DNA of 64,000 nucleotides, taken from Malacoraja senta (taxonomy: Eukaryota). The notes below the pieces were generated by a model, which was given only the letters and a program-made list of their open reading frames with translations, was not told the DNA's origin and ran no database searches. The stretch covers positions 7,874,001 to 7,938,000 of the forward strand of contig CM075986.1 in NCBI GenBank assembly GCA_038087875.1, in the 5' to 3' direction. Made by a program: the position numbers and the translations under genes. Positions 12,601-64,000 of the stretch are shown here, one piece after another (the first letter of the stretch is position 1; every line of letters begins with the position of its first letter).

Positions 12601-15600
12601 CCCCTATTTATTCCACATCTCCATCTGCCTCTTCTTTAAGACATTCCTGAAATCTACCTCTGACCAAATGTAACTTAGCTTATCCTTATTACTCATATAC
12701 TCTATTTTAAATTTTATTAAATAAAGATCCTACAAAATACCTTGGGTTATTTTACTTTGTGAAGTGTTATAAATATATGTTGTGTTTTGCTGTCATCTTT
12801 TGTGTAAAAAAATAATCTGCTCTTCTGTTTTAAAGTTAAATACTGGCCTATATCGTTCCTCTGTTGATCAGATATTAATATATGTGTTTATTTGTTTTTC
12901 AGTTTATTCCGTTGATAGTGGAGATGTGTTGTAAACTGGTGGAGGAGAAGGGTTTGGAGTACACAGGGATCTATAGGGTACCAGGGAACAATGCCATGGT
13001 CTCCAGCCTGCAAGACCAACTGAATAAGGGAATGACTGATCTAAATACCTCAGAAGAAGTAAGCTTCCGGTTCTTCTACAAACTTATTGGCATCCCCTTC
13101 TCTGCAGTTGTATAGAGTCTGGTTTTGTAAGAAAGTTTCTGAAAGCCATCTGACTTATCAGTCTCCAAGAGTCAAGAGTATTTTATTGTCAGAAGTCCCA
13201 GATAGAACATGAAATTCGTATTTGCAGCAGCACAACAGAATATGTAAGCACAGTACACTGTAAATATAATAANNNNNNNNNNNNNNNNNNNNNNNNNNNN
13301 NNNNNNNNNNNNNNNNNNNNNNNNNNNNNNNNNNNNNNNNNNNNNNNNNNNNNNNNNNNNNNNNNNNNNNNNNNNNNNNNNNNNNNNNNNNNNNNNNNNN
13401 NNNNNNNNNNNNNNNNNNNNNNNNNNNNNNNNNNNNNNNNNNNNNNNNNNNNNNNNNNNNGAATATACATACAGTGCCCTCCATAATGTTTGGGACAAAG
13501 ACCCATCATTTATTTATTTGCCTCTGTACCCCACAATTTGAGATTTGTTATAGAAAAAAATCACATGTGGTTAAAGTGCACATTGTCAGATTTTATTAAA
13601 GGCCATTTGTATACATTTTGGTTTCACCATGTAGAAATTACAGTTGTGTTTATACATAGTCCCCCCATTTCAGGGCACCATAATGTTTGGGGCACACGGC
13701 TTCACAGATGTTTGTCATTGCTCAGGTGTGTTTAATTGCCTCCTTAATGCAGGTATAAGAGAGCTCTCAGCACCTAGTCTTTCCTCCAGACTTTCCATCA
13801 CCTTTGGAAACTTTTATTGCTGTTTATCAACATGAGGACCAAAGTTGTGCCAATGAAAGTCAAATAAGCCATTATGAGACTGAGAAACAAGAATAAAAAC
13901 GTGAGAGACATCAGCCAAACCTTAGGCTTACCAAAATCAACTGTTTGTAACATCATTAAGAAGAAAGAGAGCACTGGTGAGCTTACTAATTGCAAAGGGA
14001 CTGGCAGGCCAAGGAAGACCTCCACAGCTGATGACAAAAGAATTCTCTCTATAATAAAGAAAAATCCCCAAACCTGTCTGACAGATCAGAAACACTCTTC
14101 AGGAGTCAGGTATGGATTTATCAATGACCACTCTCTGTAGATGACTGCATGAACAGAAATACAGAGGCTACACTGCAAGATGCAAACCACTGGTTAACTG
14201 CAAAAATAGGATGGCCATGTTACAGTTTGCTAAGTGCTCAAAAGAGCAACCGCAGTTCTGGAAAAAGGTCTTGTGGACAGTTGAGACGAAGATTAACTCA
14301 TATCATAGTGATGGCAAGAGCAAAGTATGGAGGAGAGAAGGAACTGCCCGGAGATCCAAAGCATATCACCTCATCTGTGAAACACGGTGGTGGGGTTGTT
14401 ATGGCCTGGGCATGTATAGCTGCTGAAGGTACTGGCTCACTTATCTTCATTGATGATACAACTGCTGATGGTAGTAGCATAATGAATTCTGAAGTGTATA
14501 GACACATCCTATCTGCTCAAGTTCAAACAAATGCCTCAAAACTCATTGGCCGGCGGTTCATTCCACAGCAAGACAATGATCCCAAACATACTGCTAAAGC
14601 AACAAGGGAACAAAGCAACAAAGCTAAAAAATGGTAAAATCTTGAGTGGCCAAGTCAATCACCCGATCTGAACCCAATTGAGCATGCCTTATATGCTGAA
14701 GAGAAAACTGAAGGGGACTAGCCCCCAAAACAAGCATAAGCTACAGATGGCTGCAATACAGGCCTGGCAGAGCATCACCAGAAAAGACACCGAGCAACTG
14801 GTGATATCCATGAATCGCAGACTTCAAGCAGCCGTTGCATGCAAAGGATATGTAACGAAATACTAAACATGACTACTTTCATTTACATGACATTGCTGTG
14901 TCCCAAACATTATGGTGCCTTGAAATGGGGGGGACAATATATATATAAACACTGCTGTAATTTCTACATGGTGAAACCAAAATGTGTAAAAATGGCCTTT
15001 ATTAAAATCTGACAATGTGCACTTTAACCACATGTGATTTTTTTCTAATACAAATCTCCAATTGTGTACATAGGCAAAAAAATAAATGATGGGTCTTTGT
15101 CCCAAACATTATCGAGGGCACTGTATATACACACGTGTTGAATATGCACACACTCACAAACAATAATAGTGATCCAGCACCAATTTTTAGTCAATGAGAA
15201 CAACATTTTTGTGCTATTCATTAATGGCTTATAAGAGACTTTGGTTTTGATCCAATGCCTCAGAGACATCGTTCATCCTTTGCCCCAGGTCTCTGATACA
15301 GAGTTCATGATTCATCGAACAATGGTTAACTGTAGGGGTCTGTATGGACATGGTGTTCTCTGTGATGATTTATGATGGCTATTTATATTAGATCATGTTG
15401 TCTTCGCAGAAATGGCAGGACCTGAATGTGATCAGCAGTTTGCTTAAACTATTTTTTCGAAAGCTTCCTCAGCCTCTCTTTACAGATGGTGAGTAAAATA
15501 TCTTAATTATCAATTGATGCAGTGTGAAAAAAGTGAATCACGTGTAATGTGGTGACATTTATATCATTAGATTAAATCAATTGTGAAAAATCATAAACTT

Positions 15601-39600: not shown

Positions 39601-41336
39601 CGTTAGTTAAATCGTCTTCATGGAACTAATTTGATGCTGTTTAATTCCAGGGATCGTGGGGGTCCAGGAAGGATCTATACAACAGGGAGCTTGTGATGTC
39701 AATCTTTGCAGCGGCCAACCGTAAGAGAAAGAAAAAGGAGGCAAAAGTGCTTGAAAGTAGCACAGATGATGATTCGGAGCATGAACCTATTAAGGCTATT
39801 AACAAAGAGAGATTATTAGACAAGAAGGAAACAGACAAAAAGAAGGATGTAGCAGGACAGAAAGAGAGGGAGCTGGGCATGAGCAGGAACAGAGGAGTGG
39901 AGCCAATTCACCAGTCCATTGTTCGTAAAGAAAGTCTGAAGAAAGCAGGAGGATCTAATCATTCAAACCAGCACTGCCATCAGCCATCTCAGTGGGAGAG
40001 CGAGGAAGCTAATGTGGACTCTTCATCTAAACCACATCTCAGCCCAACTTCAATTGGCACTGAGCATTCGCTCAAAGAAGGAACTGCCCTCAAACCTCTG
40101 GATACAGATAGAAGTAGAAAATGTACAGGTGATCCAACAACTAATACTGGTCCTCTGTGTAACAACAATAGTGAACTGTTTTCCAAAAGCTCCAAGCAGA
40201 AGATGTGGCACACACCTGAGATGGAGCACAGGGAGTTAATTCCCACCGATGCCAGCTCAATTGTTTCAGGATATTCCACCATTTCGTCCGTAATGACAAA
40301 CCTGGATCACCACTTCTGTTCTGAGGTGCAATCCATTGCAGAGAGTAGGGGCGATGAAGCTGATGATGAGAGAAGTGAGCTAATCAGCGAGTGTGGAGGT
40401 CAGATTGAAACGGACAATGAAAGTGGTTACCTCACACGCACGCTGCCAAGCAAGGCTTCCAGCTCGCAGCAGGAGAGAGGCAGGTTTTGTCGTCGTGAGT
40501 CAGATAGCAACACTAGCTCTGACAAAGAAGGAATTGCAACACAAAAGTTAAGCAGTATGCCATCTTTTAATTCTCACAGATTAATACAGTGCGACACTTT
40601 GGCTCGGAAGAAATTGACCAAACCAAAAGGAACAAATGAACTTGGCACCATGATCAATGAAGATAAAGAGCCTTCAGTGGTAACAAATCTGTTTGATAAT
40701 GCGAATCATCCCAATTCCACCAAAAAACACAGTTTCCTCAAGAGTGACTCGAACAAAGAAGACCCGACAAAAGCAGCAAAACGCATACTGGCTGATCAAA
40801 CAAAAGTTCGACTCAAAACCTCGGCAGATGATATGTTTGGCGTAGGGCTGAGAAAACAGAGTTCTCCAGAGACGCGTAGAAAGAAGAACATTAGAAGGAG
40901 ACACACAGTGGTGGTACAGAATGATTTATCAGAGTTTCACTTCAGAGAATGGAAAGAAAACCAACTGGAAAGCAAGGACAGCAGCTACAAAGGGGGCAAA
41001 GCATCTAACATGATCCAGTTAAAGCATAAAGTTGATTCTTGGGAGACGTCAGATTCAGGAGGAAAAATACAGCCGGATTTAGAATCTAAACCCAACGAAC
41101 TATCCAGACCGGGTGACCCAGATCCACAGTATTGTTCCAGTCATCTAAGTGGGAATCTTCAACCTGAACAGCCAGCATTCAATAACAAGAACTTGAGCAG
41201 CAATACAACCTCGTCTTCCCTGCCAGCTAGCTCGGCAGTAGGTCCATGTAGAGACAGTGACTCAAATTCATCCAAGTCCACAGGAATAAAGGCTCAGAAA
41301 CATCCGACCTCTTCTCGATTCCATCAGTACCTTTGA
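558..41336 (+). CDS. ARHGAP23: Rho GTPase-activating protein 23, spliced 3' portion (PH + RhoGAP + C-terminal tail); the gene starts upstream of the window
   Basis: 15 exons with AG/GT borders join in frame. Motifs that match ARHGAP23 better than its paralog ARHGAP21 (from recall): [83 protein letters not shown]. Confidence 0.92.
1470..1866 (+). mobile_element. Rex1/Babar-like LINE, RT C-terminal fragment
   Basis: ELIVDFRR...FKFLG...[13 protein letters not shown]...ESVLT...[13 protein letters not shown]...LPSIDELY. Confidence 0.8.
2316..2453 (+). CDS. ARHGAP23: ARHGAP23 exon (138 nt), start of PH domain: [46 protein letters not shown]
   Basis: tttag|TCC...AAG|gtaaga; KEGWL PH strand 1. Confidence 0.93.
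5085..5384 (+). CDS. ARHGAP23: ARHGAP23 exon (300 nt), PH domain core
   Basis: acag|AGG...GAG|gtaagc; [15 protein letters not shown]...[39 protein letters not shown]. Confidence 0.95.
6378..6430 (+). CDS. ARHGAP23: ARHGAP23 exon (53 nt) [17 protein letters not shown], post-PH helix
   Basis: ttag|GAC...AG|gtaatg; phases 0/2 fit both neighbours; similar to LISKKLNDYRK. Confidence 0.85.
7381..7540 (+). mobile_element. V-SINE 5' half
   Basis: tRNA-like head plus V core. Confidence 0.75.
8237..8331 (+). CDS. ARHGAP23: ARHGAP23 exon (95 nt) [31 protein letters not shown]
   Basis: ttgcag|C...G|gtgaat; DSSPKGSR motif. Confidence 0.88.
8718..8950 (+). mobile_element. CR1 3' fragment
   Basis: [22 protein letters not shown]..; related copies at 32115-32245 and 57260-57425. 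Confidence 0.8.
10389..10694 (-). mobile_element. tRNA-derived V-SINE (HE1-like), near full length
   Basis: Pol III A/B-box head, V core GGTTTCCTCCCACA, (TAAAC)n tail. Confidence 0.85.
10860..11250 (+). mobile_element. Older CR1 3' fragment
   Basis: Degenerate ..[19 protein letters not shown]. Confidence 0.7.
12361..12485 (+). CDS. ARHGAP23: ARHGAP23 exon (125 nt), start of RhoGAP domain ..[17 protein letters not shown]
   Basis: ttccag|AT...AAG|gtact. Confidence 0.92.
12903..13058 (+). CDS. ARHGAP23: ARHGAP23 exon (156 nt) with the arginine finger (GIYRVPG)
   Basis: ttcag|TTT...GAA|gtaagc; [37 protein letters not shown]. Confidence 0.95.
13273..13460. other. Assembly gap
   Basis: N run. 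Confidence 1.
13472..15123 (+). mobile_element. Full-length (1652 bp) Tc1-family IR/DR DNA transposon, inactivated
   Basis: TA|CAGTGCCCTC...GAGGGCACTG|TA. TIRs of ~225 bp (13472-~13696, ~14898-15123) carry the internal direct repeat CCATAATGTTTGGG. Transposase remnants: HTH (GLPKSTV), [30 protein letters not shown]. Confidence 0.95.
13832..14866 (+). pseudogene. Tc1 DD34E-type transposase pseudogene
   Basis: ATG at 13832, premature TAA at 13865, several frameshifts (ORF pieces at 13874, 14149, 14211, 14678). The first catalytic D appears mutated (WTVETK for WTDETK). Confidence 0.9.
15410..15488 (+). CDS. ARHGAP23: ARHGAP23 exon (79 nt) [26 protein letters not shown]
   Basis: cgcag|AAA...G|gtgagt. 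Confidence 0.95.
16719..16792 (+). CDS. ARHGAP23: ARHGAP23 exon (74 nt) [25 protein letters not shown]
   Basis: tacag|AT...CTG|gtaaat. Confidence 0.93.
17088..18402 (+). mobile_element. CR1 LINE, 5'-truncated and young, with an internal deletion at ~17877
   Basis: RT motifs [38 protein letters not shown]; 3' tail CTATTGTCTATTG. Confidence 0.93.
18917..19006 (+). CDS. ARHGAP23: ARHGAP23 exon (90 nt) [30 protein letters not shown]
   Basis: ttcag|CTT...AAG|gtgctc. Confidence 0.94.
19255..19625 (+). mobile_element. Rex1-like LINE 3' end (related ends at 26395-26515 and 36280-36655; minus strand at 13165-13272 and 20593-20860)
   Basis: LPSGKR.RSLK...RF.NSFFP-type coding remnant; 3' ..GCTTTTCACTGTACCTCGGTACAC..CAATAAA. 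Confidence 0.6.
19955..20205 (-). mobile_element. V-SINE
   Basis: Same family as 10389. Confidence 0.75.
20970..21095 (+). CDS. ARHGAP23: ARHGAP23 exon (126 nt) [42 protein letters not shown]
   Basis: catag|ATG...CAT|gtacgt; RhoGAP MxxxNLAxVFGPTL motif. Confidence 0.96.
21405..21465 (-). mobile_element. L2-type LINE/SINE 3' tail inserted in a decayed CR1
   Basis: Minus strand TGTAAAGCGACTTTGAGTCCTTGAAAAGCGCTATATAAATAAAATG(TAT)n. Confidence 0.65.
22837..22878 (+). CDS. ARHGAP23: ARHGAP23 exon (42 nt) [14 protein letters not shown]
   Basis: ttttag|TAT...AAA|gtaagt. Confidence 0.9.
23740..24792 (-). mobile_element. CR1 LINE, 5'-truncated, same young subfamily as 17088-18402
   Basis: [30 protein letters not shown]; near-identical by eye to 17436-18402 in reverse complement. 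Confidence 0.93.
25116..25221 (+). CDS. ARHGAP23: ARHGAP23 exon (106 nt) [35 protein letters not shown]
   Basis: tatag|GCT...G|gtaaca; VPNIxxLLxNIGRT motif shared by ARHGAP21/23. Confidence 0.92.
28330..29000 (-). mobile_element. Decayed CR1 3' fragments (similar at 15600-15880, 37680-38080, 59690-59930)
   Basis: Reverse complement of CR1 3' ORF/UTR motifs, e.g. [12 protein letters not shown]. Confidence 0.6.
33140..34200 (+). mobile_element. Old decayed CR1 RT/3' region, interrupted by a Penelope-terminus fragment at ~33660-33735
   Basis: Remnants of [27 protein letters not shown]. Confidence 0.7.
35424..35455 (+). CDS. ARHGAP23: ARHGAP23 small exon (32 nt) [11 protein letters not shown]
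   Basis: ttgcag|AT...AAG|gtaagg; phases 1/0 bridge the flanking exons. Confidence 0.9.
38416..39170 (+). mobile_element. Non-autonomous Helitron (755 bp)
   Basis: A|TC...CTAG|T termini with no TSD; 7-bp GC hairpin CAGACCC-AAC-GGGTCTG (39142-39158) ending 8 nt before the terminal CTAG. Confidence 0.8.
39651..41336 (+). CDS. ARHGAP23: ARHGAP23 terminal coding exon (GSWGSRKD...RFHQYL*)
   Basis: ttccag|GGA; contains the 547-aa ORF 39693-41336; motifs [45 protein letters not shown]. Confidence 0.94.
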   Translation, partial: GSWGSRKDLYNRELVMSIFAAANRKRKKKEAKVLESSTDDDSEHEPIKAINKERLLDKKETDKKKDVAGQKERELGMSRNRGVEPIHQSIVRKESLKKAGGSNHSNQHCHQPSQWESEEANVDSSSKPHLSPTSIGTEHSLKEGTALKPLDTDRSRKCTGDPTTNTGPLCNNNSELFSKSSKQKMWHTPEMEHRELIPTDASSIVSGYSTISSVMTNLDHHFCSEVQSIAESRGDEADDERSELISECGGQIETDNESGYLTRTLPSKASSSQQERGRFCRRESDSNTSSDKEGIATQKLSSMPSFNSHRLIQCDTLARKKLTKPKGTNELGTMINEDKEPSVVTNLFDNANHPNSTKKHSFLKSDSNKEDPTKAAKRILADQTKVRLKTSADDMFGVGLRKQSSPETRRKKNIRRRHTVVVQNDLSEFHFREWKENQLESKDSSYKGGKASNMIQLKHKVDSWETSDSGGKIQPDLESKPNELSRPGDPDPQYCSSHLSGNLQPEQPAFNNKNLSSNTTSSSLPASSAVGPCRDSDSNSSKSTGIKAQKHPTSSRFHQYL

Positions 41337-51239: not shown

Positions 51240-54200
51240 CAGATTTAAACATTCTTTATTTCTTTAGATTAGAAGATTCACAAACAGACACTAATCTAGA
51301 TGCATCGTGCAGTTTCTTAGCATATACATGCATATTATTTAGAATCTTTTATTATCTAAAAGCAGGAATAAAGTGGAGTTTATAACGTGTTGTATGATTG
51401 CTGACACATTGTTCAGGAAACTATGAAAAATGTCACATTCATGTAAAAAAAATTAATGCAAAAAAAAGGCATTTTATATTTTTTCACTTTTACAATTTGC
51501 TTAAATAGAATTTTTTAAACTTTTTTCTTCTAAACACATACTTTATATACATCTTGAAACAATCATTGCCTTTTAATTGAATGAGGAAGGATAAAGTCGC
51601 CAGCAGACAGACATTCCCAGTCTTGCACCAAAACTGAAAACAATTTAAATTGAACGTGAAGATGCCATCTGGTGTTCTCACAGGCCACTGGCTTGAAGTT
51701 TGATGTGACTGTTAGGATTTGCATTTAGTTTTCTTTCAGTGAGGGGGAAAATGAATTGCACTCATTGTTGGAATGTTCAAAAATATACTTTTTTTTGGCT
51801 CGATTTTCCCTTCCGTTTGTTTTAAATAATTTTAAATAAAAGATTTAAAAATATGCGGAGGGTGAGGTGAATTTCTTATGTACAGACAAGGAAATGTCAG
51901 TGCAGGGAAACAAGGGTTTGTATATTTTTGAATCAGCCATCAGGTTTGCACAGTGAGGAACCCCTTAGTGTTTTAGTGCCTCAAACTGGTTCTGCTCCTG
52001 ACACAACACCAACATGGCTGTCGGCTGTCAGAAAGGTATCTTGCTGGGATAAAGCTCCGAGTTTTCAGCAGGAGAGCTTATCTTACAGCCTTGAATGGGA
52101 AACCTTGAACTAGTTACTGGTTACCTTCTGCATTGGCCATAGTCTGCCAATTTCCCCACTGTAAATGGTTGCATTGTGGTATGAACAGCTCGGGAAAATA
52201 ATATTAACAGGTTAAACTGGACGTAGAAGCACTAAAATCAAATCTTTTGGGCTGACATTTCAGAACTTCTGTGCTGTACGTCATTTAATATTCCAAAGCA
52301 CAATTTCAAAGCAGATGTTTTATATTCCCTGGGACATAATGCGCTCTCTAAACCCCTCCTTCCCCCTCCCCACCCTGTCAGGATAAAGATTTGGAAGCAT
52401 TTGACGATACTGAACCTTGCAGAAACGGAAGGATTGTTGAGCAAGGCTGGGCCATGCATGAATTCAGCTGGACTAACGGAATGAATTTTAATCAGCAAAC
52501 CCTCTTGGCCACCTGGCTGGTTTGTGTTATCTTTCACTCACACAGTTGAACACGTTTCAAAAGGGTTGTAGGCACACAGAATACCAAGTAAAACAGATAT
52601 TGCATTAATTCTCATTTACAATACAAAAGGGAATACTTCCTCTTCATCAGCAGGACTTTGTTATCACCAGATACAGAGAGAGGGTGGGGAGACTCGCTTG
52701 AAATGCTTGTAAATATAAAACAGTCAACGAGGAACCCAGTCTTTAATTAATTCTTCATCTCCTGAAGTTTAGACAGAAGACATCCAATTGGTTTTATATT
52801 GACCAAGCGAGCATTGGAACTGAACATACAAGACCCACCCTCATTCATCGAAAATCCTTTCAATTAAACTTGTTCACAGAAAGATCTTTCTCAGCTCTTA
52901 AGAGGCGGTTTTGTTTTTAACAGGATCGGTGAGGGGAACATGTGGTGGTCCCTGTGAGTTTGTCCTGAGAATGGGAACTCAGAGGGGTCAGTCTACAGGA
53001 CGGTACCCTTCCTCACAAGCCACATTCAGACAGGGATAGTCGGACACAAAAGCAGTCAGATACAATTCACACAAACTCAATACAAAGTGTTAAAAGACCA
53101 CTTAAAATGTAAAGAAACTTACTGCAATTCCAATTAATTGCTTTGTGAATACGATTCTTTGTACAAAAACTCTTTAAGACAATATACAAAAAGAATAAGT
53201 GGTACATTGACTCTGCCAGTGATAAATACTCTGCACTTCTAGATATTGATTTAACAGAAATAAATCATTCTTCATATTCTATTTCTTTTTAATCCTGTGC
53301 TTTTGTAAATATTGTTTTTGTGGTATTTTTAACCTATTTTATGGTAAAGTTCATTATCCAGTTTACCATGGTTCACCCACTATACAATAATACAACCACT
53401 GAACACAACTGGACTTCACTGTGGGCATCAAGCTGCATTTCAGAGCTATAATGTGTTATGCCAGCAGAACAGAGGGGAGAGTGTGAGCAGAGGGGGAAGC
53501 AGGAAAACTGAGAGCAAGAGATGAGTGGGTGTAAGGCAGGAAGGGGGTTAACCGAGTAAAAGAGAAAATGTTGGAAAGATTGAAAATGACAGGAGGTGAT
53601 TGAAGGGAAAAATCAAAGAACCCTTGGTTACTTTTACACTGTACATTGTAGTTCTGAGCAGTTCATTATTATTGTGCTAATCTTTAGTTTACAAAATAGA
53701 TGTTATCCTAATATAGACAACGGTGCTGAGGGGTCTCTTGTGCAATCTTGAGGTCCTCAGGACAGCTGTAGGTATGTAGGGGATAGATCCAGGTCGATCA
53801 CACAACACGTGATGCTCTCAGGTTAACAGGCGGGGGGGGGGGGGGGGCTCCTGATGCATTACAACAAAAGTGCCGATGCAAGACATCAGAAAAACGCAAG
53901 TCCCACCCCTGCCTCCACGCTTTATTATAAGCGGCCCTGATGTAGGATAGAGGGTTAAAGTTGCTGATCTGCCTTGAGCGGAGAGTGCCAGATGTAGTGA
54001 TGTTTTAAGCAGCGGGTGCAGGCTGCGGGCACACACTGTGTAGCTTGTACACCTTCATTAAATGGTGGACCCAACACAAATCACTGACATAAGATATAAT
54101 TATACTTCTTTAGATACCAATGTAAAATGCACAGAACATGTCAAGTGATGAGAATTGTGTGCAGAGTTTGTGAAGTGAAACGTGTCATTTTTTTCACATC

Positions 54201-55100
54201 TATTGTGGTGACACCTTTGTAAACTGCTTGTGCTATTCTCACTAGTAACGGCTAAGTTAACACACGACAGCTCTGACAGCACTGGGCATCTTGGTGTGAG
54301 AGCGGGCAACTGGCTGGTAAGTGCTGGCTGGCGTGGACGTCCCATGTGGAGCATTCTCGGTGATGGGGTCTTCCTCTTCGCGCAGTGCCTCGTGGCTGGG
54401 GAGGTGGAGAGGAGGGAGAAAGGGAGGGAGAGAAAGAGAGAAGGAAGGAAACTGTGTGAGGAGAAATGGGGAAGACCAGGAAGGAGAGCAGATAGGGAGA
54501 GAGGGAGCAGGAAGTGAGGGAGAGACAGGAGAGGGGATGGGGAGACATGCATTGCACGTGAGGGGAGGGGGGTAGAGAGGAGGGGAGGGGGGAGGGGGGA
54601 GTGCAAGAGACGGGGAGAGAGAAGGGGAGTGGGGGGAGGGGGAAGAGAGAAGGGCGAGGAGTAGGGCACAGGAGAGAGGAAGTGAGGGAGAGAAAGCAGG
54701 GGAGAGGGTGGATTCATGGCTCTGATTCTCCTCTGAGTCACAGGTTCAAGATAGAAGGGCAGGAACAGGAGAAGAATCAGCTAGAATGTTGGGGGCTGCA
54801 GGATGGAAAGGGTTACTGGGGCATCTTAGCCAGTGACTGCCCCTCTGGGCACTGCACTGGCAGTGGGTATGGAAGCAGACAGTGCGGAAGACTGCATTGT
54901 GGGCACAGTTAGGTAACGACATTGGGGACAGGGAGCGGAAGCAGAAACGGTGATTTCAGGTTGTGGGGTCGTCCTTGCTAGCAGCAGTAATGACAGGACC
55001 CCCCCAAACCCATTACTGAGGTCTACGAGGATCCTGGGAGGCAAACAGTCTTGTCAGAGTGGCTGACTGGCAAGTCCTCTGAGCCTGCCACAAAATGTCC
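51240..55100 (-). other. SRCIN1: Probable 3' UTR of the convergent gene (SRCIN1); minus-strand AATAAA at 51255-51260
   Basis: Repeat-poor; plus-strand TTTATT and A-rich blocks typical of a reversed AU-rich UTR. The terminal coding exon was not identified. Confidence 0.4.
54400..54710. repeat. GA-rich low-complexity tract
   Basis: Strongly purine-rich plus strand with G-runs. Confidence 0.8.
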
Positions 55101-56197
55101 CCTTGTCATTACAGAGAGGGAAGGGAAGAGATGTGAGCCTCACTGCACGAAACATAGACCAGGCACAACGGGGAACAGAAAGGGGGGTGGAACAGGAGGG
55201 GGGGGGGGGGGAGACAAGAAATTAACAATTAGAATCTTACATTGGTTGCAACGAAGATTACTTTTGACAAGAAAACAACAGTGAACATCAGTAGCCGTAC
55301 AAAGACAACTGTAGACAGCAGAGGATCGGAGTCAATGAATGACTACACAGGCACAGATACACCTGGGTGGACTTTGAAGAAGGGAGTGACACAGTTTAGC
55401 CACAGTTACAAATTCTGATACTAATCCCACATGACCTCTCGTGACTGCTCTACAACGTTTCAAGGATTCACGTTCCTACCTTTCTGTGTTCTTGGTCTTT
55501 TTCTCAGGAACTTTGGCCCAACCAAGTATTTCAGTTACTTGGGAGATACAAGGAAGTGCAGATGCTGGTGTACAAAAAAAGACAAAGTGCTGGAGTAACT
55601 CAGTGGGTCAGGAAGCATCTCTGGAGAACGTGCTTGGGTGATGTTCAGCTTCAAAGTCACCTATCCATGTTCTCCAGAGATGCTGCCTGACCCGCTGAGT
55701 TACTCCAACACTTTGTGTCTATTTCAGTTACTTATTCCAGGCAACCCATTTCCCAGCACTTGAGAACCACCGACATGCTGACTGCCTCCACCAGGTGAAC
55801 CTTGTATGGGTCCAGGTATATTTTGAAGGTCTCAACTCGAAACGTCCCCCTTTCCTTCTATCCAGAGATGCTGTCTTTTCCACTGAGTTAATCCAGCATT
55901 TTGTGTCTATTTTCCTTCTTAATCCCTCTTATTCCCTCTGCTGTAGTCCTATCCCTGGTTCAGCCAGTTATCCCACATTTTATTTATCTTACACACGATT
56001 CCCATGGCTACGTTCATTGGTCTCTACTGACGTACATTTTATTTCCCACATTAAAATGCAGTCAGGAAACTTCAGAAATGCAAATGGAATTAGGCACTAA
56101 CAGGACCTGTTTCCACAAATCTAATTCTGAATCTAATCTAACTGGTCCAAAAACAACCCACTCTGAGATGGTCAAAACTTCAACATAATTGACTGAT

Positions 56198-56400
56198 TAT
56201 AGACAATAGGTGCAGGAGTAGGCCATTCTAGCCAGCACCGCCGTTCAATGTGATCATGGCTGATCATCCCCAATCAGTACCCCGTTCCTGCCTTCTCCCC
56301 ATATCCCCTGACTCCACTATCTTTAAGAGCCCTATCCAGCTCTCTCTTGAAAGTATCCAGAGACCAGCCCCCACCGCCCTCTGAGACAGACTCACAACTC
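56198..56400 (-). mobile_element. CR1 3' end, same subfamily
   Basis: AGACAATAGGTGCAGGAGTAGGCC..., shared with 23745 onward. Confidence 0.85.
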
Positions 56401-56404
56401 TCTG

Positions 56405-56925
56405 ATTGAAAGATACAGCATGAAAACGGGCCCTTCGACCCACCGAGTCCACATCGATCACCCCTTCCCACTAGTTCTACGTTATCCCACTTTCTCATCG
56501 ACTCCCCACATATTAGGGACAATTTACGGAGTGCCAGTTAACCTACAAACCCGCACATCTTTGGGATGTGGGAGGAAGATCATGTGGGAATAAACGGATA
56601 ATTCTCGGGATGGAAGAATGGTTCATTGTCCAACTGTTCACAATATCACCGATTTGTACAAGGCACTGTATCCTGTGTTGAATTTAGTTCAGAGATACAG
56701 TGCAGAAACGAACCCTTCAGCCCATTGAGTCCACGCTGACCATCCATCACCCATTCACACTAGTTGTGTGTTAATCCCACTTTCTCATCCACTCTCTACA
56801 CACACAAGGGCCAATTAATTTACAAACCCGCCTGTCTTAGTGATGTAGGAGGAAACCGGAGCAAACCTATGTGGTCACAGGGAGAACGTGCAAACTCCAC
56901 ACAGACAGCACCCAAGGTCAGGTTA
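56405..56925 (-). mobile_element. Two V-SINE copies (56405-56578, 56683-56925)
   Basis: GAGATACAG..GGCCCTTCG.CCCACCGAGTCC shared with the other copies. Confidence 0.75.
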
Positions 56926-57551
56926 GCATCTCTAACTGCTGGGCTGAAGGGAGGGTAACGGAGTGGAGAGTAATAGGCAGATGGAGTGGTGGGTAAGACG
57001 GGAGGGGGGGGGGGGGGCGGTGGACGGCAGGGATGGGAGGGTGGGGGGATGGGGAGGGACCCCAGGTGTGTCAGTGGGAATGGGGAAAGAAAACAGGACG
57101 TGGGTTAGTGAAAGTTGGAAGATTCAGTGATGGTACAATGGGCTGTGGAAGCCTTGGAATATGAGGTGCTGATCGTGTATGTTGCAGCCGGTGTCTGTGG
57201 AGAAAGCTGAGACAGAGGTTGGTGTGGGCACAGAGAAGAGAGTGGGTCCCTGTAGCCCCCGCTGTGGAGGCCAAGTCATTGGATATTTTTAAGGTGGAGA
57301 TTGACAGATTCTTGATCAGGGGTTATGGGGAGAAGGCAGGAGAATGGGGTTGAGAGGGAAAGATAGATCAGCCACGATTGAATGGCGGAGTAGGCTTGAT
57401 GGCCCATCATTCTCCTCCCATAACTTATGAACGTATGAGTGAGTGACAAAGGCTTTGTGTCTCCTGAACAGGAGTCAAAATGGCGTCAGGTAAGGAGGGA
57501 CGAGGTGAAATGGAAAGCGGGAGGGAGGGATATAGGAAGGGGCAGTTCCCT

Positions 57552-57932
57552 CGCCGTGGCTAGTGTGACCAACATGCTGGTTGCCCGTGGCTACTGGGAC
57601 CTACCTGCTAGAGCCCTACTTGCCGGTGGCTAGTGGGACCTACCTGCTAGAGCCCTGGTTGCCGGTGGCTAGTGGGACCTACCTGCGGGGTGCCCTGGTG
57701 GCCGGTGGCTAGTGGGACCTACCTGCGGGGTGCCCTGGTGGCCGGTGGCTAGTGGGACCTACCTGCGGGGTGGCCGGTGGCTAGTGGGACCTACCTGCAG
57801 GGTGCCCTGGTTGCCGGTGGCTAGTGGGACCTACCTGCTAGAGCCCTGGTTGCCGGTGGCTAGTGGGACCTACCTGCTAGAGCCCTGGTGGCCGGTGGCT
57901 AGTGGGACCTACCTGCGGGGTGCCCTGGTGGC
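57552..57932. repeat. Minisatellite, 39-40 bp unit, about 9.5 copies, derived from an exon-intron junction
   Basis: Unit GCCGGTGGCTAGTGGGACCTACCTGC(GGGGT/TAGA)GCCCTGGT(G/T). Confidence 0.95.
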
Positions 57933-58035
57933 CCTGCAGCTTCAGGTAGTCCTCCCGCTGCTTGTTATGCTTCAACTTCTCGCAGCCTTGCTGCTTCAGC
58001 TTCGGGGCCGGTGGGATGGGCATCCAGCCTCCACC
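57913..58035 (-). CDS. SRCIN1: SRC kinase signaling inhibitor 1 (p140Cap), near-terminal exon (123 nt): GGGWMPIPPAPKLKQQGCEKLKHNKQREDYLKLQGHQGTPQ
   Basis: Minus strand ctgttccccag|GGT...CAG|gtaggt. KHNKQREDYLKLQ resembles mammalian SRCIN1 KHGKQRAEYMRIQ (recalled). The convergent position downstream of ARHGAP23 matches known synteny. Confidence 0.72.
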
Positions 58036-58182
58036 CTGGGGAACAGAGACACGGTCAGCAAGTCACCCCCCCCCTCCTCAGTGTATACCCCCCCCCAACA
58101 CACCCCTCCCACTGGGAAACACACTCCCAACTCTCCCCCACCCTGGGGAACAGAGACACGGTCAGCATGGCTCCCCCAGAGA

Positions 58183-58270
58183 CTGAAGAAGGGTCTCGAC
58201 CTGAAACGTCGCCCGTTCCTTCTCTCCAGAGATGCTGCCTGTCCCGCTGAGTTACTCCAGCATTTTGTGT
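58183..58270 (+). mobile_element. Penelope terminal repeat with hammerhead-like core. Related copies: ~10005-10102(-), 28125-28285, 36015-36270(-), 42800-42898(+), 48203-48330(-), 55543-55910, 58730-58915, 61043-61152(-)
   Basis: CTGAAGAAGGGTCTCGACCTGAAACGTC...CCAGAGATGCTGCCTGTCCCGCTGAGTTACTCCAGCATTTTGTGTC; variants recur more than 10 times. Confidence 0.75.
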
Positions 58271-58998
58271 CCCCCTGGGGCACCCCCTCCCCCCCAGTGT
58301 ACACCCCCTCCACCCCGCCCCCCCCAACTCTGACACACCCCTCCCACTGGGAAGCGCTCTCCCAACACCCCCCCCCTCACCTAGCCCCATCACACACACC
58401 CCCTTCCCCCAGTGGCAACATCAATCCTCCCACCACCAGACACGCATGGCCTGGTGGGTGGGGGGAGCCGGTCTATGGTGAGCCTTGGATCCAGACCCAG
58501 GGGACGGGACAGGGGTTGTCCTCTGCTCTCCAGGGCTGAACCATCCTGGTGCCACAATCCCAGCCCCGGCCGAGATAACAACCCCTCTTGTTTATATCCC
58601 AACTATTGCAATGATTATTTTACACATTTCAGCCAATTGGCTGAAGCTCAGTTTGAAGACAGCTTCATCTGTCAAATTCATCTGTCAAAGACCAATAAAA
58701 GGTTTAAAACTCAGCACATGACACCTTTGCTGGATAGATACAATGTTGGAGTAACTCCGCGGGTCAGGCAGCCTCTCTGGACAACATGGAGAGATGACGC
58801 TTTGGACCTTGAACATCACCCATCCATGTTCTCCAGAGATGCTGCCTGACCCGTTGAGTTATTCCAGCACTTTGTGTCTATCTTTGGTGTAAAGCAGCAT
58901 CTGCAATTCCTTTTTTATTCCAACTTCTCTGGAACCGGGTTTACACCTGATGACCGGAGGGAGGTGTGATTAACAGGACCGTTTCCCTCAGTTCCATC

Positions 58999-59228
58999 TT
59001 TAGATTTAGTTTAGAGATACAGCGCACAAACAGGCCCTTCGGCCCAGCAAGTCCGCGCCGACCAGCGATCACCCCAAACACTAGCACTATCCTACATACC
59101 AGGGAGAATTTACAGAAGCCAATTAACCTACAAACCCAAACATTTTGGAGTGTGGGAGAAAACCCATGGGGAGAACGTACAAACTCCGCAGACAGCACCC
59201 GTAGTCAGGATCGAACCTGGGTCTCTGG
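58999..59228 (-). mobile_element. V-SINE
   Basis: TTTAGTTTAGAGATACAGC...ACAGCACCCGTAGTCAGGATCGAACC. Confidence 0.82.
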
Positions 59229-59932
59229 CCCGCCCCCACACACCACGCAGCCCCTTACCTTCCCCGCACCCCCCTCTCTCCGGAAAGGCAGCGTCACACA
59301 GCAAGAGCAGAGACTTAGAGAAGGTGACAAGGTGGAGTTCAGCCCGAGACAGCAGCAGGAGATCAGGGCGCTGAAAGCACCATCAGCTTGGTGGAGAGAG
59401 CTGAGACGTTGGTTGGCAAGGAGAGGGGAGATGGGCCGAAGGGTCTGAGCGGGACTCCGCCGTCACTGGCACCCAGGCCTCACGACAGCCAGAGAGAAAC
59501 AAAGGGCAGACCAGAGGAGAGCAGCAAACTATCTGAACGTCAGGAGGGAGACAGGAGCTTCAGAGAGTCTCTACACAAGATTCATCCTGATCTCCACCTG
59601 CAGGCTGAGGAGATTAGTTAACCTGGGCCTTATGTTGGCATGGACATTATGGGCCGAAGGGCCTGTTCTGCGATCAGGTTAGAGTTGTATGGAAACAGGC
59701 CCTTCAGCCCACCTTGTCCATGCCGTCCATGTTGACATACTGGGCACATCCCATTTGCCTGGCATTTGGACCATTGGCCTCTAAACGTTCCCATCCATAT
59801 ATCTGTTCAAATATCTTTTATTAGCCATAACTGTATCGATCCTATAGCTTCCTCTGACAGCGCGCTCCAGATATGGACCACCCTCGGAGAGAGTGGTGCC
59901 CCCAGCTCGCTCTTAAATCTCTCTCCGCTCAT

Positions 59933-60195
59933 CTTTAGTTTAGTTTACAGATACAGACCTTTTGGGCCACCGAGTCCGCGCCGACCAACGATCCCCGCAC
60001 ACTGACACTATCCCACACACATTAGGGACACTTTACAATCCTTACCAAAGCCAATTAGCCTACAAACCTGTACGTCTTTGGAGTGTGGGAGGAAACCAGA
60101 GCACCCGGAGAATACCCACACAGGTCACGGGGAGAACGTACAAACTCCGTACAGTCAGCACCCGTAGTCAGGATCGACCCGGGTCCCTGGCGCTG
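59933..60195 (-). mobile_element. V-SINE
   Basis: Same family as 10389. Confidence 0.82.
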
Positions 60196-60419
60196 GAAGA
60201 CAACAAACCTACTGCTGCCCAAACATGCTACTAAAGTACTGGAGCGCCTCTGATCCGGGTAAGCCCAGGTAAGGCCTAATAAGGTCACTTCTCAACCTCC
60301 AATACTCTGAAGAAGAAAGTACCAGCCTAGCCAACCCTCCCTACAACTCGAGCCTGCAATTCCAGGTAACATGCTGTGTCGAGTGTGAAGCAAAGAGACA
60401 GGAGGCTGCACAAGTGCCC

Positions 60420-60682
60420 AGAGTGGAGGGGGGCAGAGGCCCGGAGCGGAGTGGAGCAGGGCAGAGGCCCAGAGCGGAGTGGAGCAGGGCAGAGGCCCGG
60501 AGCGGAGTGGAGCAGGGCAGAGGCCCGGAGCGGAGTGGAGCAGGGCAGAGGCCCAGAGTGGAGTGGAGTGGAGTAGAGGCCCGGAGCGGAGCGGGGCAGA
60601 GGCCCAGAGCGGAGCGGGGCAGAGGCTCGGAGTGGAGTGGAGTGGAGGGGGGCAGAGGCCCGGAGTGGAGCGGGGCAGAGGC
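60420..60682. repeat. G-rich 28-bp minisatellite running into an assembly gap
   Basis: (GGAGCGGAGTGGAGCAGGGCAGAGGCCC)n. Confidence 0.9.
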
Positions 60683-60882
60683 NNNNNNNNNNNNNNNNNN
60701 NNNNNNNNNNNNNNNNNNNNNNNNNNNNNNNNNNNNNNNNNNNNNNNNNNNNNNNNNNNNNNNNNNNNNNNNNNNNNNNNNNNNNNNNNNNNNNNNNNNN
60801 NNNNNNNNNNNNNNNNNNNNNNNNNNNNNNNNNNNNNNNNNNNNNNNNNNNNNNNNNNNNNNNNNNNNNNNNNNNNNNNNNN
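60683..60882. other. Assembly gap
   Basis: N run. Confidence 1.
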
Positions 60883-61280
60883 GTGATAATGAGTTATTCA
60901 GACAATGAAACTCAACAGGGTGACATTCCAAATGATCTCTGGCCCCACCACTACGTTTTAACCCACTGCAAACCTACTTATCATTCATGTTTCCTCTAAA
61001 ATAATTGTCCTAGATTGTCCAAAAGTACTTTGATTTGTTGTGTAAGAAAGAACTGCAGATTCTGGTAAAATTCGAAGGTCGACACAAAATGCTGGAGTAA
61101 CTAAGCGGGACAGACAGCATCTCTGGAGAGAAGGAATGGGTGACGTTTCGGACTTGATTTGTTGTTTCCTTCTTGACGAAAGGAGATTTGCAGATCAGAT
61201 GGACAACTTCTCAGACGTGCAAGGAACAGAGGCAAATATCCCAAGTGAGGATGGCATCTAGTATCCTTCTACACCTAGAG

Positions 61281-61449
61281 CAGTGGTTCTTAACCTGGGG
61301 GTCATTTGGGGCTTTGCTGGAGGTCATGAAGGGGACACAAATAACATATCAATTTGTTGTGCCCATGTTTAGGAACCTAAGGTACATACCACATACAGTA
61401 TTTTGTTCACGTATGCGCGTACTGGTGCCAAAAAGGTTAAGAACCACTG
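61281..61449. mobile_element. hAT (Charlie-like) MITE, 169 bp
   Basis: Perfect 16-bp TIRs CAGTGGTTCTTAACCT / AGGTTAAGAACCACTG; 8-bp TSD ACCTAGAG at 61273-61280 and 61450-61457. Confidence 0.92.
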
Positions 61450-61607
61450 ACCTAGAGGAAGCACACTCGCCAGGCAGTGGAGAGACCGTGATCAGAAAGG
61501 CAGATGTCCCAGGACGAGGTTGTCCCACGACACTTCATGCTGATGCAGGAGATGTGCCCAAAACGCCACTGCACAATTTGTGGTCATGGGGAACTGCGGA
61601 TAAAAAT

Positions 61608-62206
61608 GCGGGCCTCACGGTGGCACTGCAGTAGAGCTGCTACCTTACAGCGCCAGAGACCCGGGTTCCATCCTGACCACGGGTGCTATCTGTACGGAGT
61701 TTGTACATTCTCTCTGTGACTGTGTGGATTTTCTCCGGGTGATCATAGTTGTAGCAGGTCTCCGAAAAAACGGCGACTGGACCCCCCCACAACATAAAAT
61801 TTGAAATAGAATCATTACTTTAACAAAAAAAAAAATGAAGTCACCACCGGCGACAACCTACGTTAACCTGGCGACAACTACGACAGCACCTACGTCAGGA
61901 GAAGTCAAGCTACGCTCAATGGCGCCAAAACAACTGTCGCCGACTGTTTCCGAAATTTTTTCAACATGTTGAAAATCCAGCGGCGACCAGAAAGACGCTA
62001 CGACTCTTTGGGCGAATGAGGAGAAAACTCACGACCATAAAGGCGATACCCTGGCGACCATGTGGCGACAGCCTAGTCGCCTGTAGTCACCTAAAAAATC
62101 GCCTAAGTGGGACAAGCCCTCAAGATAGCGTTAGCGTACAGGAATCGCTGGTCGGCGTGGACTCAGTGGGCTGATGGGTCTGTTTCTGCGCTGTATCTCT
62201 AAACTA
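61608..62206 (+). mobile_element. V-SINE (61608-61741 and 62121-62206) interrupted by a truncated MITE-like element (61742-62120)
   Basis: SINE head and tail flank a CpG-rich insert ending ..AAGTGGGACAAGCCCT. Confidence 0.7.
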
Positions 62207-62612
62207 CACTGAGTTTATACAACAGGGTTTAATGTCCTTCAGCTGCACACACTTTGATATATGGCAGGATGTATGGAGGGTGTCATACGCACATACTAAT
62301 TCATTAGCTTGGACAGTGTGTAAAGCAGCCACTTGGGTCGAAGGGCCTGTTTCCACGCAGTATAACCCTATGACACCATGACAGCCTATTATTTCCATAT
62401 GAAATGCTTGTCCACACACCTTCAGAATGGGAGGAGAGAGGCAAGGTGGGTTAAACACTTACATCCTGTTATAATTCTTCATTATGTACACCCATATGCT
62501 AACATTATTATATCTTGTACTGATCTTTCTTTTCTTGCAGTCTGTGTCCTGTCTGACCTATTGCAGTCTGTGTCCTGTCTGACCTATTGTTGTCGAACCA
62601 ACTTATCGTTAA

Positions 62613-62902
62613 GTTTAGTTTAGAGATACAGCATGGACACAGTCCCTTCGGCCCACCCAGTCCGTGCCGACCAGCGATCCCCCTTCACTAGCACTATCCT
62701 ACACACTAGGGACAATTTTACAGAAGCCAATTAACCTTCAAACCTGCACGTCTTTGGAATGTAGGAGGAAACCAGAGCACCCGGAGAAAACCCACAGGGT
62801 CACAGGGAGAACGTGCAAACTCCGTACAGACAGCACCCACAGTCAGGATTGAACCCGGTTCTCTGACGCTGTGAGGCAGTAGCTCTACTGCCGCGCCACT
62901 GT
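62613..62902 (-). mobile_element. V-SINE, full length
   Basis: Same family as 10389. Confidence 0.85.
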
Positions 62903-62964
62903 TCTTTTGAAAGATTTTTGCAAAGGAATATTTCACTCTGCATCACTGGCACAGCCAGTAACCT

Positions 62965-64000
62965 ATTTCCACATACCTCGACTCCATCCTATCCGCCCCC
63001 TGGTTAAATCCCTCCCGACCTATGTTCAAGACACCTCAGACACTCTCCGTCTTCTCCGGGCATGCCGTTCTCTAGGCCCCCATCTCCTCATGTTCACCGT
63101 GGACGTCCAGTCACTCTACACCTCCATCCCCCACCAGGAGGGTCTCAAAGCCCTGCGGTTCTTCCTCGACCGGAGAACCAACCAATCCCCGTCTACAGAT
63201 ACTCTCCTCTGCCTAGCGGAGCTGGTCCTTACCCTTAATAACTTTTTGTTTGACTCCTCCCATTTCCTCCAAATACAAGGCGTAGCTGTGGGCACGCGCA
63301 TGGGCCCCAGCTATGCCTGCCTCTTTGTAGGGTACGTCGAACAATCCTTGTTCGAGGCGTACCAGGGCCCCATCCCCGACCTCTACCTCTGCTACATCGA
63401 CGATTGCATTGGTGCTACCTTCTGCACCCACACACAACTCACTGACTTCATCAACTTCAAATACACCTGGACCATTTCCGACATTTCCCTACCATTTCTT
63501 GACCTCACTATCTCCATCGCAGGTGATAGACTTCTGACCGACATCCACTATAAACCCAATGACTCCCATGGCTATCTGGACTACACTTCTTCCCAACCTG
63601 CTTCCTGTAAGGACTCCATCCCCTACTCCCAATTCCTTCGTCTACGCCGCATCTGCTCCCAGGATGAGGTGTTCCACACCAGGGCATCGGAAATGTCCTC
63701 ATTCTTCAGGGAACGGGGGTTCCCCTCTTCTACCATAGATGAGGCTCTCACCAGGGTCTCTTCAATACCCCGCAACACTGCTCTCTCTCCCCATCCCCCC
63801 ACTCGGATCAAGGGCAGAGTCCCCCTAGTCCTCACCTTTCACCCCACTAGCCGTCGCATACAACAAATAGTCCTCCGTCATTTTCGCCACCTCCAACGTG
63901 ACCCCACCACTCGCCACATCTTCCAATCTCCCCCCCCTGTCTGCTTTCCGCAAAGACCGCTCCCTCCGTAACTCCCTGGTCAATTCTTCCCTTCCCTCCC
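62965..64000 (+). mobile_element. Penelope-like retroelement RT fragment (5'-truncated, runs off the window)
   Basis: PTYVQDT, DVQSLYTSIPH, G.AVGTRMGPSYACLF, YIDD, FLDL, YKP..SH.YL, SIPYSQFLRLRRICS; a small in-frame deletion and a terminal frameshift. Confidence 0.9.

What the first reader, a model, noticed from the sequence alone, without database searches (positions are those of the whole stretch)
57552..57932. Minisatellite built from the SRCIN1 splice donor: nine tandem CAG|GTAGGT sites
Seen: the repeat unit is the last ~18 nt of the putative SRCIN1 exon plus the first ~22 nt of its intron. The minus strand therefore carries nine intact CAG|GTAGGT donors ~39-40 nt apart (one unit is shorter), plus one decayed copy at ~57567. 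Reading past the first donor gives VGPTSHRPPGL then TAG (57879-57877). Inference: any distal donor truncates the C-terminus. The next two donors lie only ~3 and ~42 nt past the stop (NMD escape by the established 50-55 nt rule), while farther ones exceed it (NMD target). Donor choice or repeat copy number could act as a dial on SRCIN1 isoform and dose.
Basis: partly seen in the sequence, partly recalled or inferred. Interest (0 to 1): 0.72.

Follow-up and report, generated by a model that had tools for sequence, protein, structure and literature searches.

The report
Splice-donor minisatellite in skate SRCIN1 intron
The last intron of a skate's SRCIN1 gene begins with a real tandem repeat that copies the exon's splice donor eight more times, but this kind of repeat is already known from human genes such as F7, and the only transcripts seen (from two related skates) use the first donor.

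Summary
A 39-40-nt minisatellite (about 57560-57933, minus strand) carries nine exact CAG|GTAGGT sites. Its first unit spans the 3' end of a 123-nt exon (58035-57913).

That exon is a real SRCIN1 exon. It is the last coding exon in every Amblyraja radiata and Leucoraja erinacea SRCIN1 isoform retrieved (15 of the 21 cluster members).

Spliced contigs from two related skates join 57913 directly to 55142, so the first donor is the one used. The terminal exon opens with TGA (55142-55140). A distal donor would therefore not truncate SRCIN1. It would add 11 residues (VGPTSHRPPGL) before the TAG at 57879-57877.

No distal-donor transcript was seen. However, no RNA of the window's own species was available, and contigs hide rare forms.

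The class is known: minisatellites whose first unit spans an exon-intron border occur in human F7, IFI6 (6-16), CBS, LMNB2 and PDGF. In these, the first donor, or the first donor plus the two nearest copies, is used. Earlier notes of this scan, which I did not re-check, report six more such arrays on other DNA of this genome.

Verdict: a new member of a known kind, most likely a neutral intronic repeat. Interest is low.

The parts
57913..58035 (-). Last coding exon of SRCIN1. It is 123 nt long, phase 0 to 0, and encodes GGGWMPIPPAPKLKQQGCEKLKHNKQREDYLKLQGHQGTPQ.
   Evidence: Translation is. The only hit among 1.84 billion representative proteins is the C-terminus of Hypanus sabinus SRCIN1-like (E 3.7e-4). 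tblastn against skate SRCIN1 isoforms gives E about 1e-20 and 93% identity, and all of them end exactly at this exon's end. Spliced contigs cover 57913-58037.
57907..57915 (-). Authentic 5' splice site CAG|GTAGGT. The last exon base is 57913 and the GT is at 57912-57911.
   Evidence: Contigs X1 record 3 and X3 record 17 pass from 57913 straight to 55142 with adjacent record positions.
57560..57933 (-). Minisatellite of nine 32-40-nt units plus one decayed copy. The first unit spans the exon-intron border. Two unit types occur: A ends ...CACCCCGCAG like the exon, and B ends ...CTCTAGCAG. Two A-B-B blocks of 127 nt are 122/127 identical.
57599..57876 (-). Eight pseudo-donors CAG|GTAGGT, with last exon bases at 57874, 57835, 57795, 57763, 57723, 57683, 57644 and 57605.
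   Evidence: No contig uses any of them.
57877..57879 (-). In-frame TAG reached if the first donor is bypassed. It ends an 11-residue extension, VGPTSHRPPGL.
55143..57912 (-). Last intron of SRCIN1, 2770 nt. It runs GT...AG, with a pyrimidine-rich tract before the acceptor.
   Evidence: Joint seen in the contigs of X1 and X3. Sequence.
55140..55142 (-). TGA stop codon, the first codon of the terminal exon.
   Evidence: Consistent with all retrieved skate isoforms ending at ...PQ.
52300..55142 (-). Terminal exon, consisting of 3' UTR after the TGA. It continues below 52300, beyond the stretch that was laid.
   Evidence: X1 records 1-3 and X3 records 15-17 lie along it at even depth. The intron just above it (55300-55499) has zero depth in X1 and X3, while the DNA run X17 covers it.

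Best explanation
This is an intronic minisatellite that grew by tandem duplication of a roughly 40-nt piece straddling the exon-intron border of SRCIN1's last coding exon. Growth was probably by slippage or unequal exchange, including one three-unit block. As a result, the authentic donor is followed by eight sequence-identical pseudo-donors.

Splicing most likely takes the first, authentic donor and joins it to the acceptor at 55143/55142. The reading frame then stops on the first codon of the terminal exon. The downstream copies are removed with the intron and have little or no effect.

The array is tolerated for two reasons. The first donor wins. And even an occasional slip to the next copy would only add 11 residues.

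Shown: the array, the exon's identity, the junction 57913>55142 in two related skates, and the TGA. Inferred: silence of the pseudo-donors in this species, and neutrality.
For: - The array and its nine identical donors are real.
- The exon's tail is part of a coding sequence conserved across sharks and rays (...KQRE[ED][YF]L[KR][LM]...QQ). The exon therefore came first and the array was copied from it.
- Few private substitutions and a 122/127-identical three-unit block point to recent growth by duplication.
- Spliced contigs from two organisms join 57913 to 55142 with no array letters in between.
- TGA is the first codon of the terminal exon.
- The array RNA is no more structured than shuffled sequence (z +2.09), so no special fold is involved.
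- Precedent: in human F7 intron 7, a 37-bp array of 5-9 units with identical donors uses only the most upstream one. LMNB2 and PDGF behave likewise (PMC1557585).
- Minisatellites are common here, with about seven arrays in this 64-kb window.
Against: - No RNA from the window's own species was available. The two spliced contigs come from relatives that differ from the window at about 4-6% of exon bases, and I could not see their arrays.
- Logan contigs drop minor isoforms.
- In IFI6 and CBS the two nearest pseudo-donors are used alongside the authentic one (PMC1557585 introduction), so complete silence cannot be assumed.
- All nine 9-mers are intact. This could hint at constraint, but with so few private substitutions it is not significant.
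Confidence: 0.72

Rival explanations
1. There is minor constitutive use of the one or two nearest pseudo-donors (57874, 57835), as in human IFI6 and CBS. This would give a small fraction of SRCIN1 with an 11-residue tail (VGPTSHRPPGL). The mRNA would escape NMD because the TAG lies 3 or 42 nt before the last junction. No regulatory role is implied.
For: The donors are identical 9-mers lying 39 and 78 nt downstream. [quoted passage not shown] The array has no structure that would hide the sites.
Against: The only junction in the contigs of two related skates is from 57913. F7, the case closest in unit size (37 bp), shows no use of pseudo-sites even at low level.
Confidence: 0.15
2. Regulated choice among the nine donors, or variation in repeat number, would set the SRCIN1 isoform and dose. 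Near donors would give a stable variant and far donors would feed nonsense-mediated decay.
For: The stop-to-junction distances fit the 50-55-nt rule, and this is the last junction: 3 and 42 nt for the near donors against 82-272 nt for the far ones.
Against: No distal-donor transcript was seen. There is no truncation, because the canonical stop is the first codon of the next exon. Experiments on F7 show a cell-type-independent preference for the first of several identical donors. Earlier notes of this scan report similar arrays in six unrelated places of the same genome (not re-checked), which suggests a mutational by-product rather than a device specific to SRCIN1.
Confidence: 0.04
3. The repeated U1-binding sites just inside the intron act as a platform. 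They would strengthen recognition of the authentic donor or protect the last intron from premature cleavage. Copy number would then affect expression without any use of the extra donors.
For: Each unit is a near-consensus U1 site, matching MAG|GURAGU at 8 of 9 positions. From memory only, and not checked here: F7 intron 7 repeat number has been linked to FVII levels, and intronic U1 binding is known to suppress premature polyadenylation.
Against: The 9-mers show no demonstrable constraint. The exon is conserved and spliced in sharks and rays, though I could not check whether their introns carry an array.
Confidence: 0.06
4. This is an assembly artefact: the true genome has fewer units or none.
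For: Contigs of the same-species DNA run X17 give almost no depth over 57700-57899 (4.4 against about 22 beside it). Nearby, a 28-nt minisatellite abuts an assembly gap at 60683-60882.
Against: Low depth is what k-mer contigs give over any 39-nt repeat, and the tool itself skips repeats. The array has ordered unit variants and a 32-nt short unit. It has unique flanks on both sides and no adjoining N run.
Confidence: 0.03

Closest known systems
Human F7 (coagulation factor VII) intron 7 minisatellite (Borensztajn et al. 2006, PMC1557585)
   Same: Its unit is 37 bp, against 39-40 here, and it has 5-9 copies, against 9 here. The first unit spans the exon-intron border, so the authentic donor is followed by identical pseudo-donors. 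Only the most upstream donor is used, which matches the single junction seen here in two related skates.
   Different: The F7 unit holds only 4 exon bases, against about 21 here. F7 exon 7 is internal and coding continues after it. Here the exon is the last coding one and the next exon opens with the stop. F7 polymorphism and pseudo-site silence are shown by experiment, whereas neither was tested here.
Human IFI6 (6-16) intron 2 and CBS intron 13 minisatellites (as summarised in PMC1557585)
   Same: Both are donor-spanning minisatellites. They show that the two nearest pseudo-donors can be used constitutively. In this array, the two nearest copies are exactly the ones that would escape NMD.
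   Different: They have many more copies (25 pseudo-sites in IFI6, 15-20 repeats in CBS), and use of the pseudo-sites is documented. None is documented here.
Human LMNB2 (100-bp units) and PDGF intron 4 (81-bp units) minisatellites (as summarised in PMC1557585)
   Same: Both are donor-spanning arrays in which only the authentic donor is used.
   Different: Their units are much longer.
Other donor minisatellites noted by this scan in the same skate genome: ZBTB16 (two), FUT11, GNPTG, lamin LIII and an NKp30-like receptor
   Same: They share the same anatomy, with an exon's donor copied in tandem into its own intron. The earlier follow-up notes reached the same verdict, a known kind with no sign of use.
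   Different: They lie in other genes, with other unit lengths (21-41 nt) and copy numbers (3-43). I did not re-check them.

Membership tests
Minisatellites whose first unit spans an exon-intron border (F7 / IFI6 / CBS / LMNB2 / PDGF type) | Head-to-tail array of units of roughly 10-100 nt | tested here: met
   Period 39, 8.8 copies, score 485. Unit lengths are 39, 39, 40, 32, 40, 40, 39 and 39 nt.
Minisatellites whose first unit spans an exon-intron border (F7 / IFI6 / CBS / LMNB2 / PDGF type) | The first unit contains the authentic exon-intron junction, so the donor sequence is repeated identically in the intron | tested here: met
   There are nine exact CAG|GTAGGT sites. Units 5 and 6 repeat the last 21 exon bases exactly.
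Minisatellites whose first unit spans an exon-intron border (F7 / IFI6 / CBS / LMNB2 / PDGF type) | The exon is real and the first site is the donor actually used | tested here: met
   The exon matches annotated SRCIN1 of skates, rays and sharks. Spliced contigs of two related skates join 57913 to 55142.
Minisatellites whose first unit spans an exon-intron border (F7 / IFI6 / CBS / LMNB2 / PDGF type) | Downstream pseudo-donors are silent, or only the nearest ones are used | tested here: inconclusive
   No contig carries array units between the exon and the terminal exon. But the RNA is from relatives, contigs drop rare forms, and no RNA run of this species was found.
Minisatellites whose first unit spans an exon-intron border (F7 / IFI6 / CBS / LMNB2 / PDGF type) | Copy number varies among individuals (VNTR) | not testable with these tools
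   Only one assembly is available, plus k-mer contigs that cannot span the array.
SRCIN1 (SRC kinase signaling inhibitor 1, p140Cap) gene | The exon's product matches annotated SRCIN1 proteins at the corresponding position | tested here: met
   tblastn gives E about 1e-20 and 93% identity to the C-terminal 43 residues of Amblyraja radiata and Leucoraja erinacea SRCIN1 isoforms. E is 1e-6 to 1e-12 for most other ray and shark models and weaker (about 0.006) for the two Heterodontus models. These proteins carry Pfam PF03915.
SRCIN1 (SRC kinase signaling inhibitor 1, p140Cap) gene | The rest of the gene (AIP3 domain and so on) lies upstream on the same strand | not testable with these tools
   No other SRCIN1 exon lies in 58036-64000, so the gene continues beyond the window's end.
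Splicing coupled to nonsense-mediated decay (regulated unproductive splicing) | A stop lies more than 50-55 nt before the last exon-exon junction in the alternative form | tested here: met
   This holds for donors 4-9 only, on paper: 82, 114, 154, 194, 233 and 272 nt. For donors 2 and 3 the distances are 3 and 42 nt. The junction is the last one.
Splicing coupled to nonsense-mediated decay (regulated unproductive splicing) | The alternative junctions exist in RNA | tested here: not met
   Only 57913>55142 was seen. The power of this test is weak, as noted above.
Splicing coupled to nonsense-mediated decay (regulated unproductive splicing) | The alternative form rises when NMD is blocked | not testable with these tools
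   This needs an experiment.

The most novel reading that the evidence does not exclude
In skate brain the pseudo-donors are really used. The two nearest would give a stable SRCIN1 with an 11-residue tail, and the farther ones would feed nonsense-mediated decay. Array length, which may vary between individuals, would then shift SRCIN1 dose. This is a heritable copy-number dial acting through donor choice.
Probability: 0.04. Interest if true: 0.6.

Novelty: new member of a known kind. Interest (0 to 1): 0.15.

Why it matters
If the extra donors were used, this would be a natural case in which repeat number sets the amount of a synaptic scaffold protein. On the evidence here it is instead one more example of a repeat type described in human genes decades ago.

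Its modest value is twofold:
- It fixes the 3' end of skate SRCIN1: the last coding exon, a 2770-nt last intron, and a stop codon as the first codon of the terminal exon.
- It adds a seventh case to the donor minisatellites already noted in this genome. Together they could serve as a natural test set for the rule that the first of several identical donors wins, outside mammals.

Tried and rejected
- Pfam scan of the exon and of two proline-rich stop-free stretches downstream (56823-57104, 54103-54780) found no family. The latter stretch lies in the 3' UTR. The former lies in the intron.
- I looked for genomic DNA of other skates, to see whether the array is shared. The exact look-up of A. radiata SRCIN1 isoforms X3 and X2 found nothing on record. 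A search with the 61-residue stop-to-stop reading that runs from the exon into the first unit found no fragment. Conservation of the array is therefore untested.
- I looked for RNA of the window's own species and found none. The only good holders (X17, X18) look like DNA.
- I tested whether a fold might hide the pseudo-donors. The array RNA is less stable than shuffled sequence (z +2.09), so this idea was rejected.
- I considered that the exon might be unspliced and terminal, with a lost stop. This was rejected because contigs splice it to 55142 and some ray and shark models continue into other downstream exons.
- The 288-codon stop-free stretch on the plus strand (57673-58536) has no support as a gene. 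It is best explained as a by-product of repeat composition.
The exon was searched alone, by reference.

Full report
**The observation**

The stretch 57552-57932 was read on the minus strand. Tandem Repeats Finder reports an array at 57577-57916 with period 39, 8.8 copies, 89% matches and score 485.

The 9-mer CAGGTAGGT occurs nine times in the whole 64-kb window. All nine are on the minus strand inside the array, against 0.45 expected by chance. The last exon bases are 57913, 57874, 57835, 57795, 57763, 57723, 57683, 57644 and 57605. Unit lengths are 39, 39, 40, 32, 40, 40, 39 and 39 nt.

The 22-nt intronic core of the unit is identical in eight units and is found nowhere else in the window. 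A tenth copy has decayed to CAT|GTTGGT near 57573.

There are two unit types. Type A ends like the exon (...GGCCACCAGGGCACCCCGCAG). Type B ends ...GGCAACCAGGGCTCTAGCAG. Units 5 and 6 repeat the last 21 bases of the exon exactly. A three-unit A-B-B block of 127 nt occurs twice at 122/127 identity. This shows growth by block duplication and a young age.

**Is the 123-nt segment an exon of SRCIN1?**

Yes. Its translation is GGGWMPIPPAPKLKQQGCEKLKHNKQREDYLKLQGHQGTPQ. I searched it alone, by reference, against 1.84 billion representative proteins.

- The single hit was residues 1694-1730 of a 1734-residue protein (E 3.7e-4). NCBI names this protein SRC kinase signaling inhibitor 1-like of Hypanus sabinus.
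- A search with that protein's C-terminal part returned SRCIN1 models from rays, skates and sharks, nearly all with Pfam PF03915.
- tblastn of those proteins against the window hits only 58041-57913. E is about 1e-20 and identity 93% for Amblyraja radiata and Leucoraja erinacea.
- All 15 retrieved isoforms of those two skates, out of 21 cluster members, end exactly at the last codon of this exon (...KLQGHQGNPQ). So do most shark and ray models.
- The window differs from both skates at two residues. It therefore comes from a third skate species.

On the plus strand the window carries a PH domain and a RhoGAP domain. From memory, this fits the ARHGAP23-SRCIN1 neighbourhood of other vertebrates.

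**Which donor is used, and what follows?**

No RNA run of the window's own species was found. I laid four runs on 52300-58299.

- Run X17 is DNA of the same species. It has no differences over 52300-55243.
- Runs X1 and X3 come from two other organisms and behave as RNA. They have even depth along 52300-55142, nothing over 55300-55499 or 57700-57899, and depth again on the exon.
- X1 record 3 (2037 nt) runs 53216-55142 and then, at the very next letter of the record, 57913-58037.
- X3 record 17 (326 nt) runs 54999-55142 and then 57913-58037.

Both contigs therefore join the first donor (57913) to an acceptor at 55143/55142, removing a 2770-nt intron. No array unit lies between the two sides. 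Their two extra matching letters at 58036-58037 fit an upstream exon ending in AAG (Lys), as in the annotated ...DPK|GGG junction.

The window sequence at the acceptor reads ...tttcgtgcag|TGAggctc. The first codon of the terminal exon is a stop. This explains why all the annotated proteins end at this exon. It also makes this exon the penultimate one, so the 57913>55142 junction is the last junction of the mRNA.

A distal donor cannot truncate SRCIN1, because nothing coding follows the exon. It would extend the protein by VGPTSHRPPGL up to the TAG at 57879-57877. The result is the same whichever distal donor is used.

From that TAG to the junction the distances are 3, 42, 82, 114, 154, 194, 233 and 272 nt for donors 2 to 9. 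By the established 50-55-nt rule the first two would escape decay and the rest would not.

No transcript of that kind was seen. The test is weak, however. The RNA is from relatives whose arrays I could not inspect, and contigs drop minor forms.

**Mechanism**

The conserved coding tail of the exon shows that the exon came first and that the array was copied from the border into the intron. The array RNA has no unusual structure (z +2.09 against shuffles). The sites are therefore probably accessible and functional in principle.

The best-studied parallel is human F7 intron 7. It has a 37-bp array of 5-9 units whose first unit spans the border. There, all pseudo-donors are functional when tested, but only the most upstream one is ever chosen, in several cell types (PMC1557585).

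The same paper lists other cases:
- LMNB2 and PDGF, where only the first donor is used.
- IFI6 (6-16) and CBS, where the authentic donor plus the two nearest copies are used.

I therefore hold that the first donor is used essentially always (0.72). The main rival is low-level use of the one or two nearest copies, giving an NMD-immune form with 11 extra residues (0.15). The dial (0.04), a U1-platform role (0.06) and an assembly artefact (0.03) are less likely.

**Context in this genome**

Earlier notes of this scan report six other donor-spanning minisatellites on other DNA of the same genome: ZBTB16 twice, FUT11, GNPTG, lamin LIII and an NKp30-like receptor. Each was judged a known kind with no sign of use. 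I did not re-check them.

Minisatellites are frequent here, with about seven arrays in this window. A rough estimate gives seven array starts per 64 kb times a 40-nt target, or about 0.4% per donor. By that estimate, many such coincidences are expected genome-wide by chance. Selection would then keep only those arrays that extend into the intron. This estimate is inference, not a test.

**What could not be done**

I could not obtain the orthologous intron of other skates, so conservation and copy-number variation remain open.

**Verdict**

The repeat is real and was accurately described. It lies on a correctly identified gene. It is a new member of a long-known kind, and the one testable part of the functional reading came out in favour of the ordinary explanation.

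Noticed in passing
window 58028-58177 (minus strand): The acceptor of the same exon is duplicated too. A 43-nt piece (pyrimidine tract, AG and the first exon bases GGTGG) recurs 107 nt upstream at 91% identity (58135-58177 against 58028-58070). It is part of a G-rich repeat of about 107 nt that reaches to about 58400 and is interrupted by a dispersed element. Use of the upstream copy would shift the frame. The contigs stop matching at 58037, as expected for the annotated acceptor.
   Followed up: partly
window 55140-55142 and protein ends: The SRCIN1 stop codon is the first codon of the terminal exon. Nearly all annotated skate, ray and shark isoforms end at the same exon border. This 'stop-first' last exon therefore seems conserved in cartilaginous fishes. 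The conservation is inferred from protein ends only, except in this window.
   Followed up: partly
window 54497-54649: This is a CT-rich, low-complexity part of the 3' UTR. It lies inside 54103-54780, which is stop-free in all three minus-strand frames. It differs in length between species: the related skate's contig has 86 letters where the window has 153.
   Followed up: no
window 60421-60682: A 28-nt minisatellite (9.4 copies) in the upstream SRCIN1 intron runs straight into the assembly gap at 60683-60882. Its true length is unknown. The gap was left untouched.
   Followed up: no
window 55500-57500 and 58183-58271: Dispersed repeats show enormous summed contig depth in all four runs, and there are many false 'joints' between copies (for example 55722 to 58183). 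The 58183-58271 element is the one another first-stage note calls a Penelope terminus with a hammerhead core. A related inverted pair lies at 58744-58869.
   Followed up: no
window 5037-5402, 12879-13112, 39645-41333 (plus strand): PH-domain and RhoGAP-domain exons, together with a 563-codon open stretch, belong to a gene convergent with SRCIN1. It is probably the ARHGAP21/23-type neighbour. Only the two domains were checked.
   Followed up: partly
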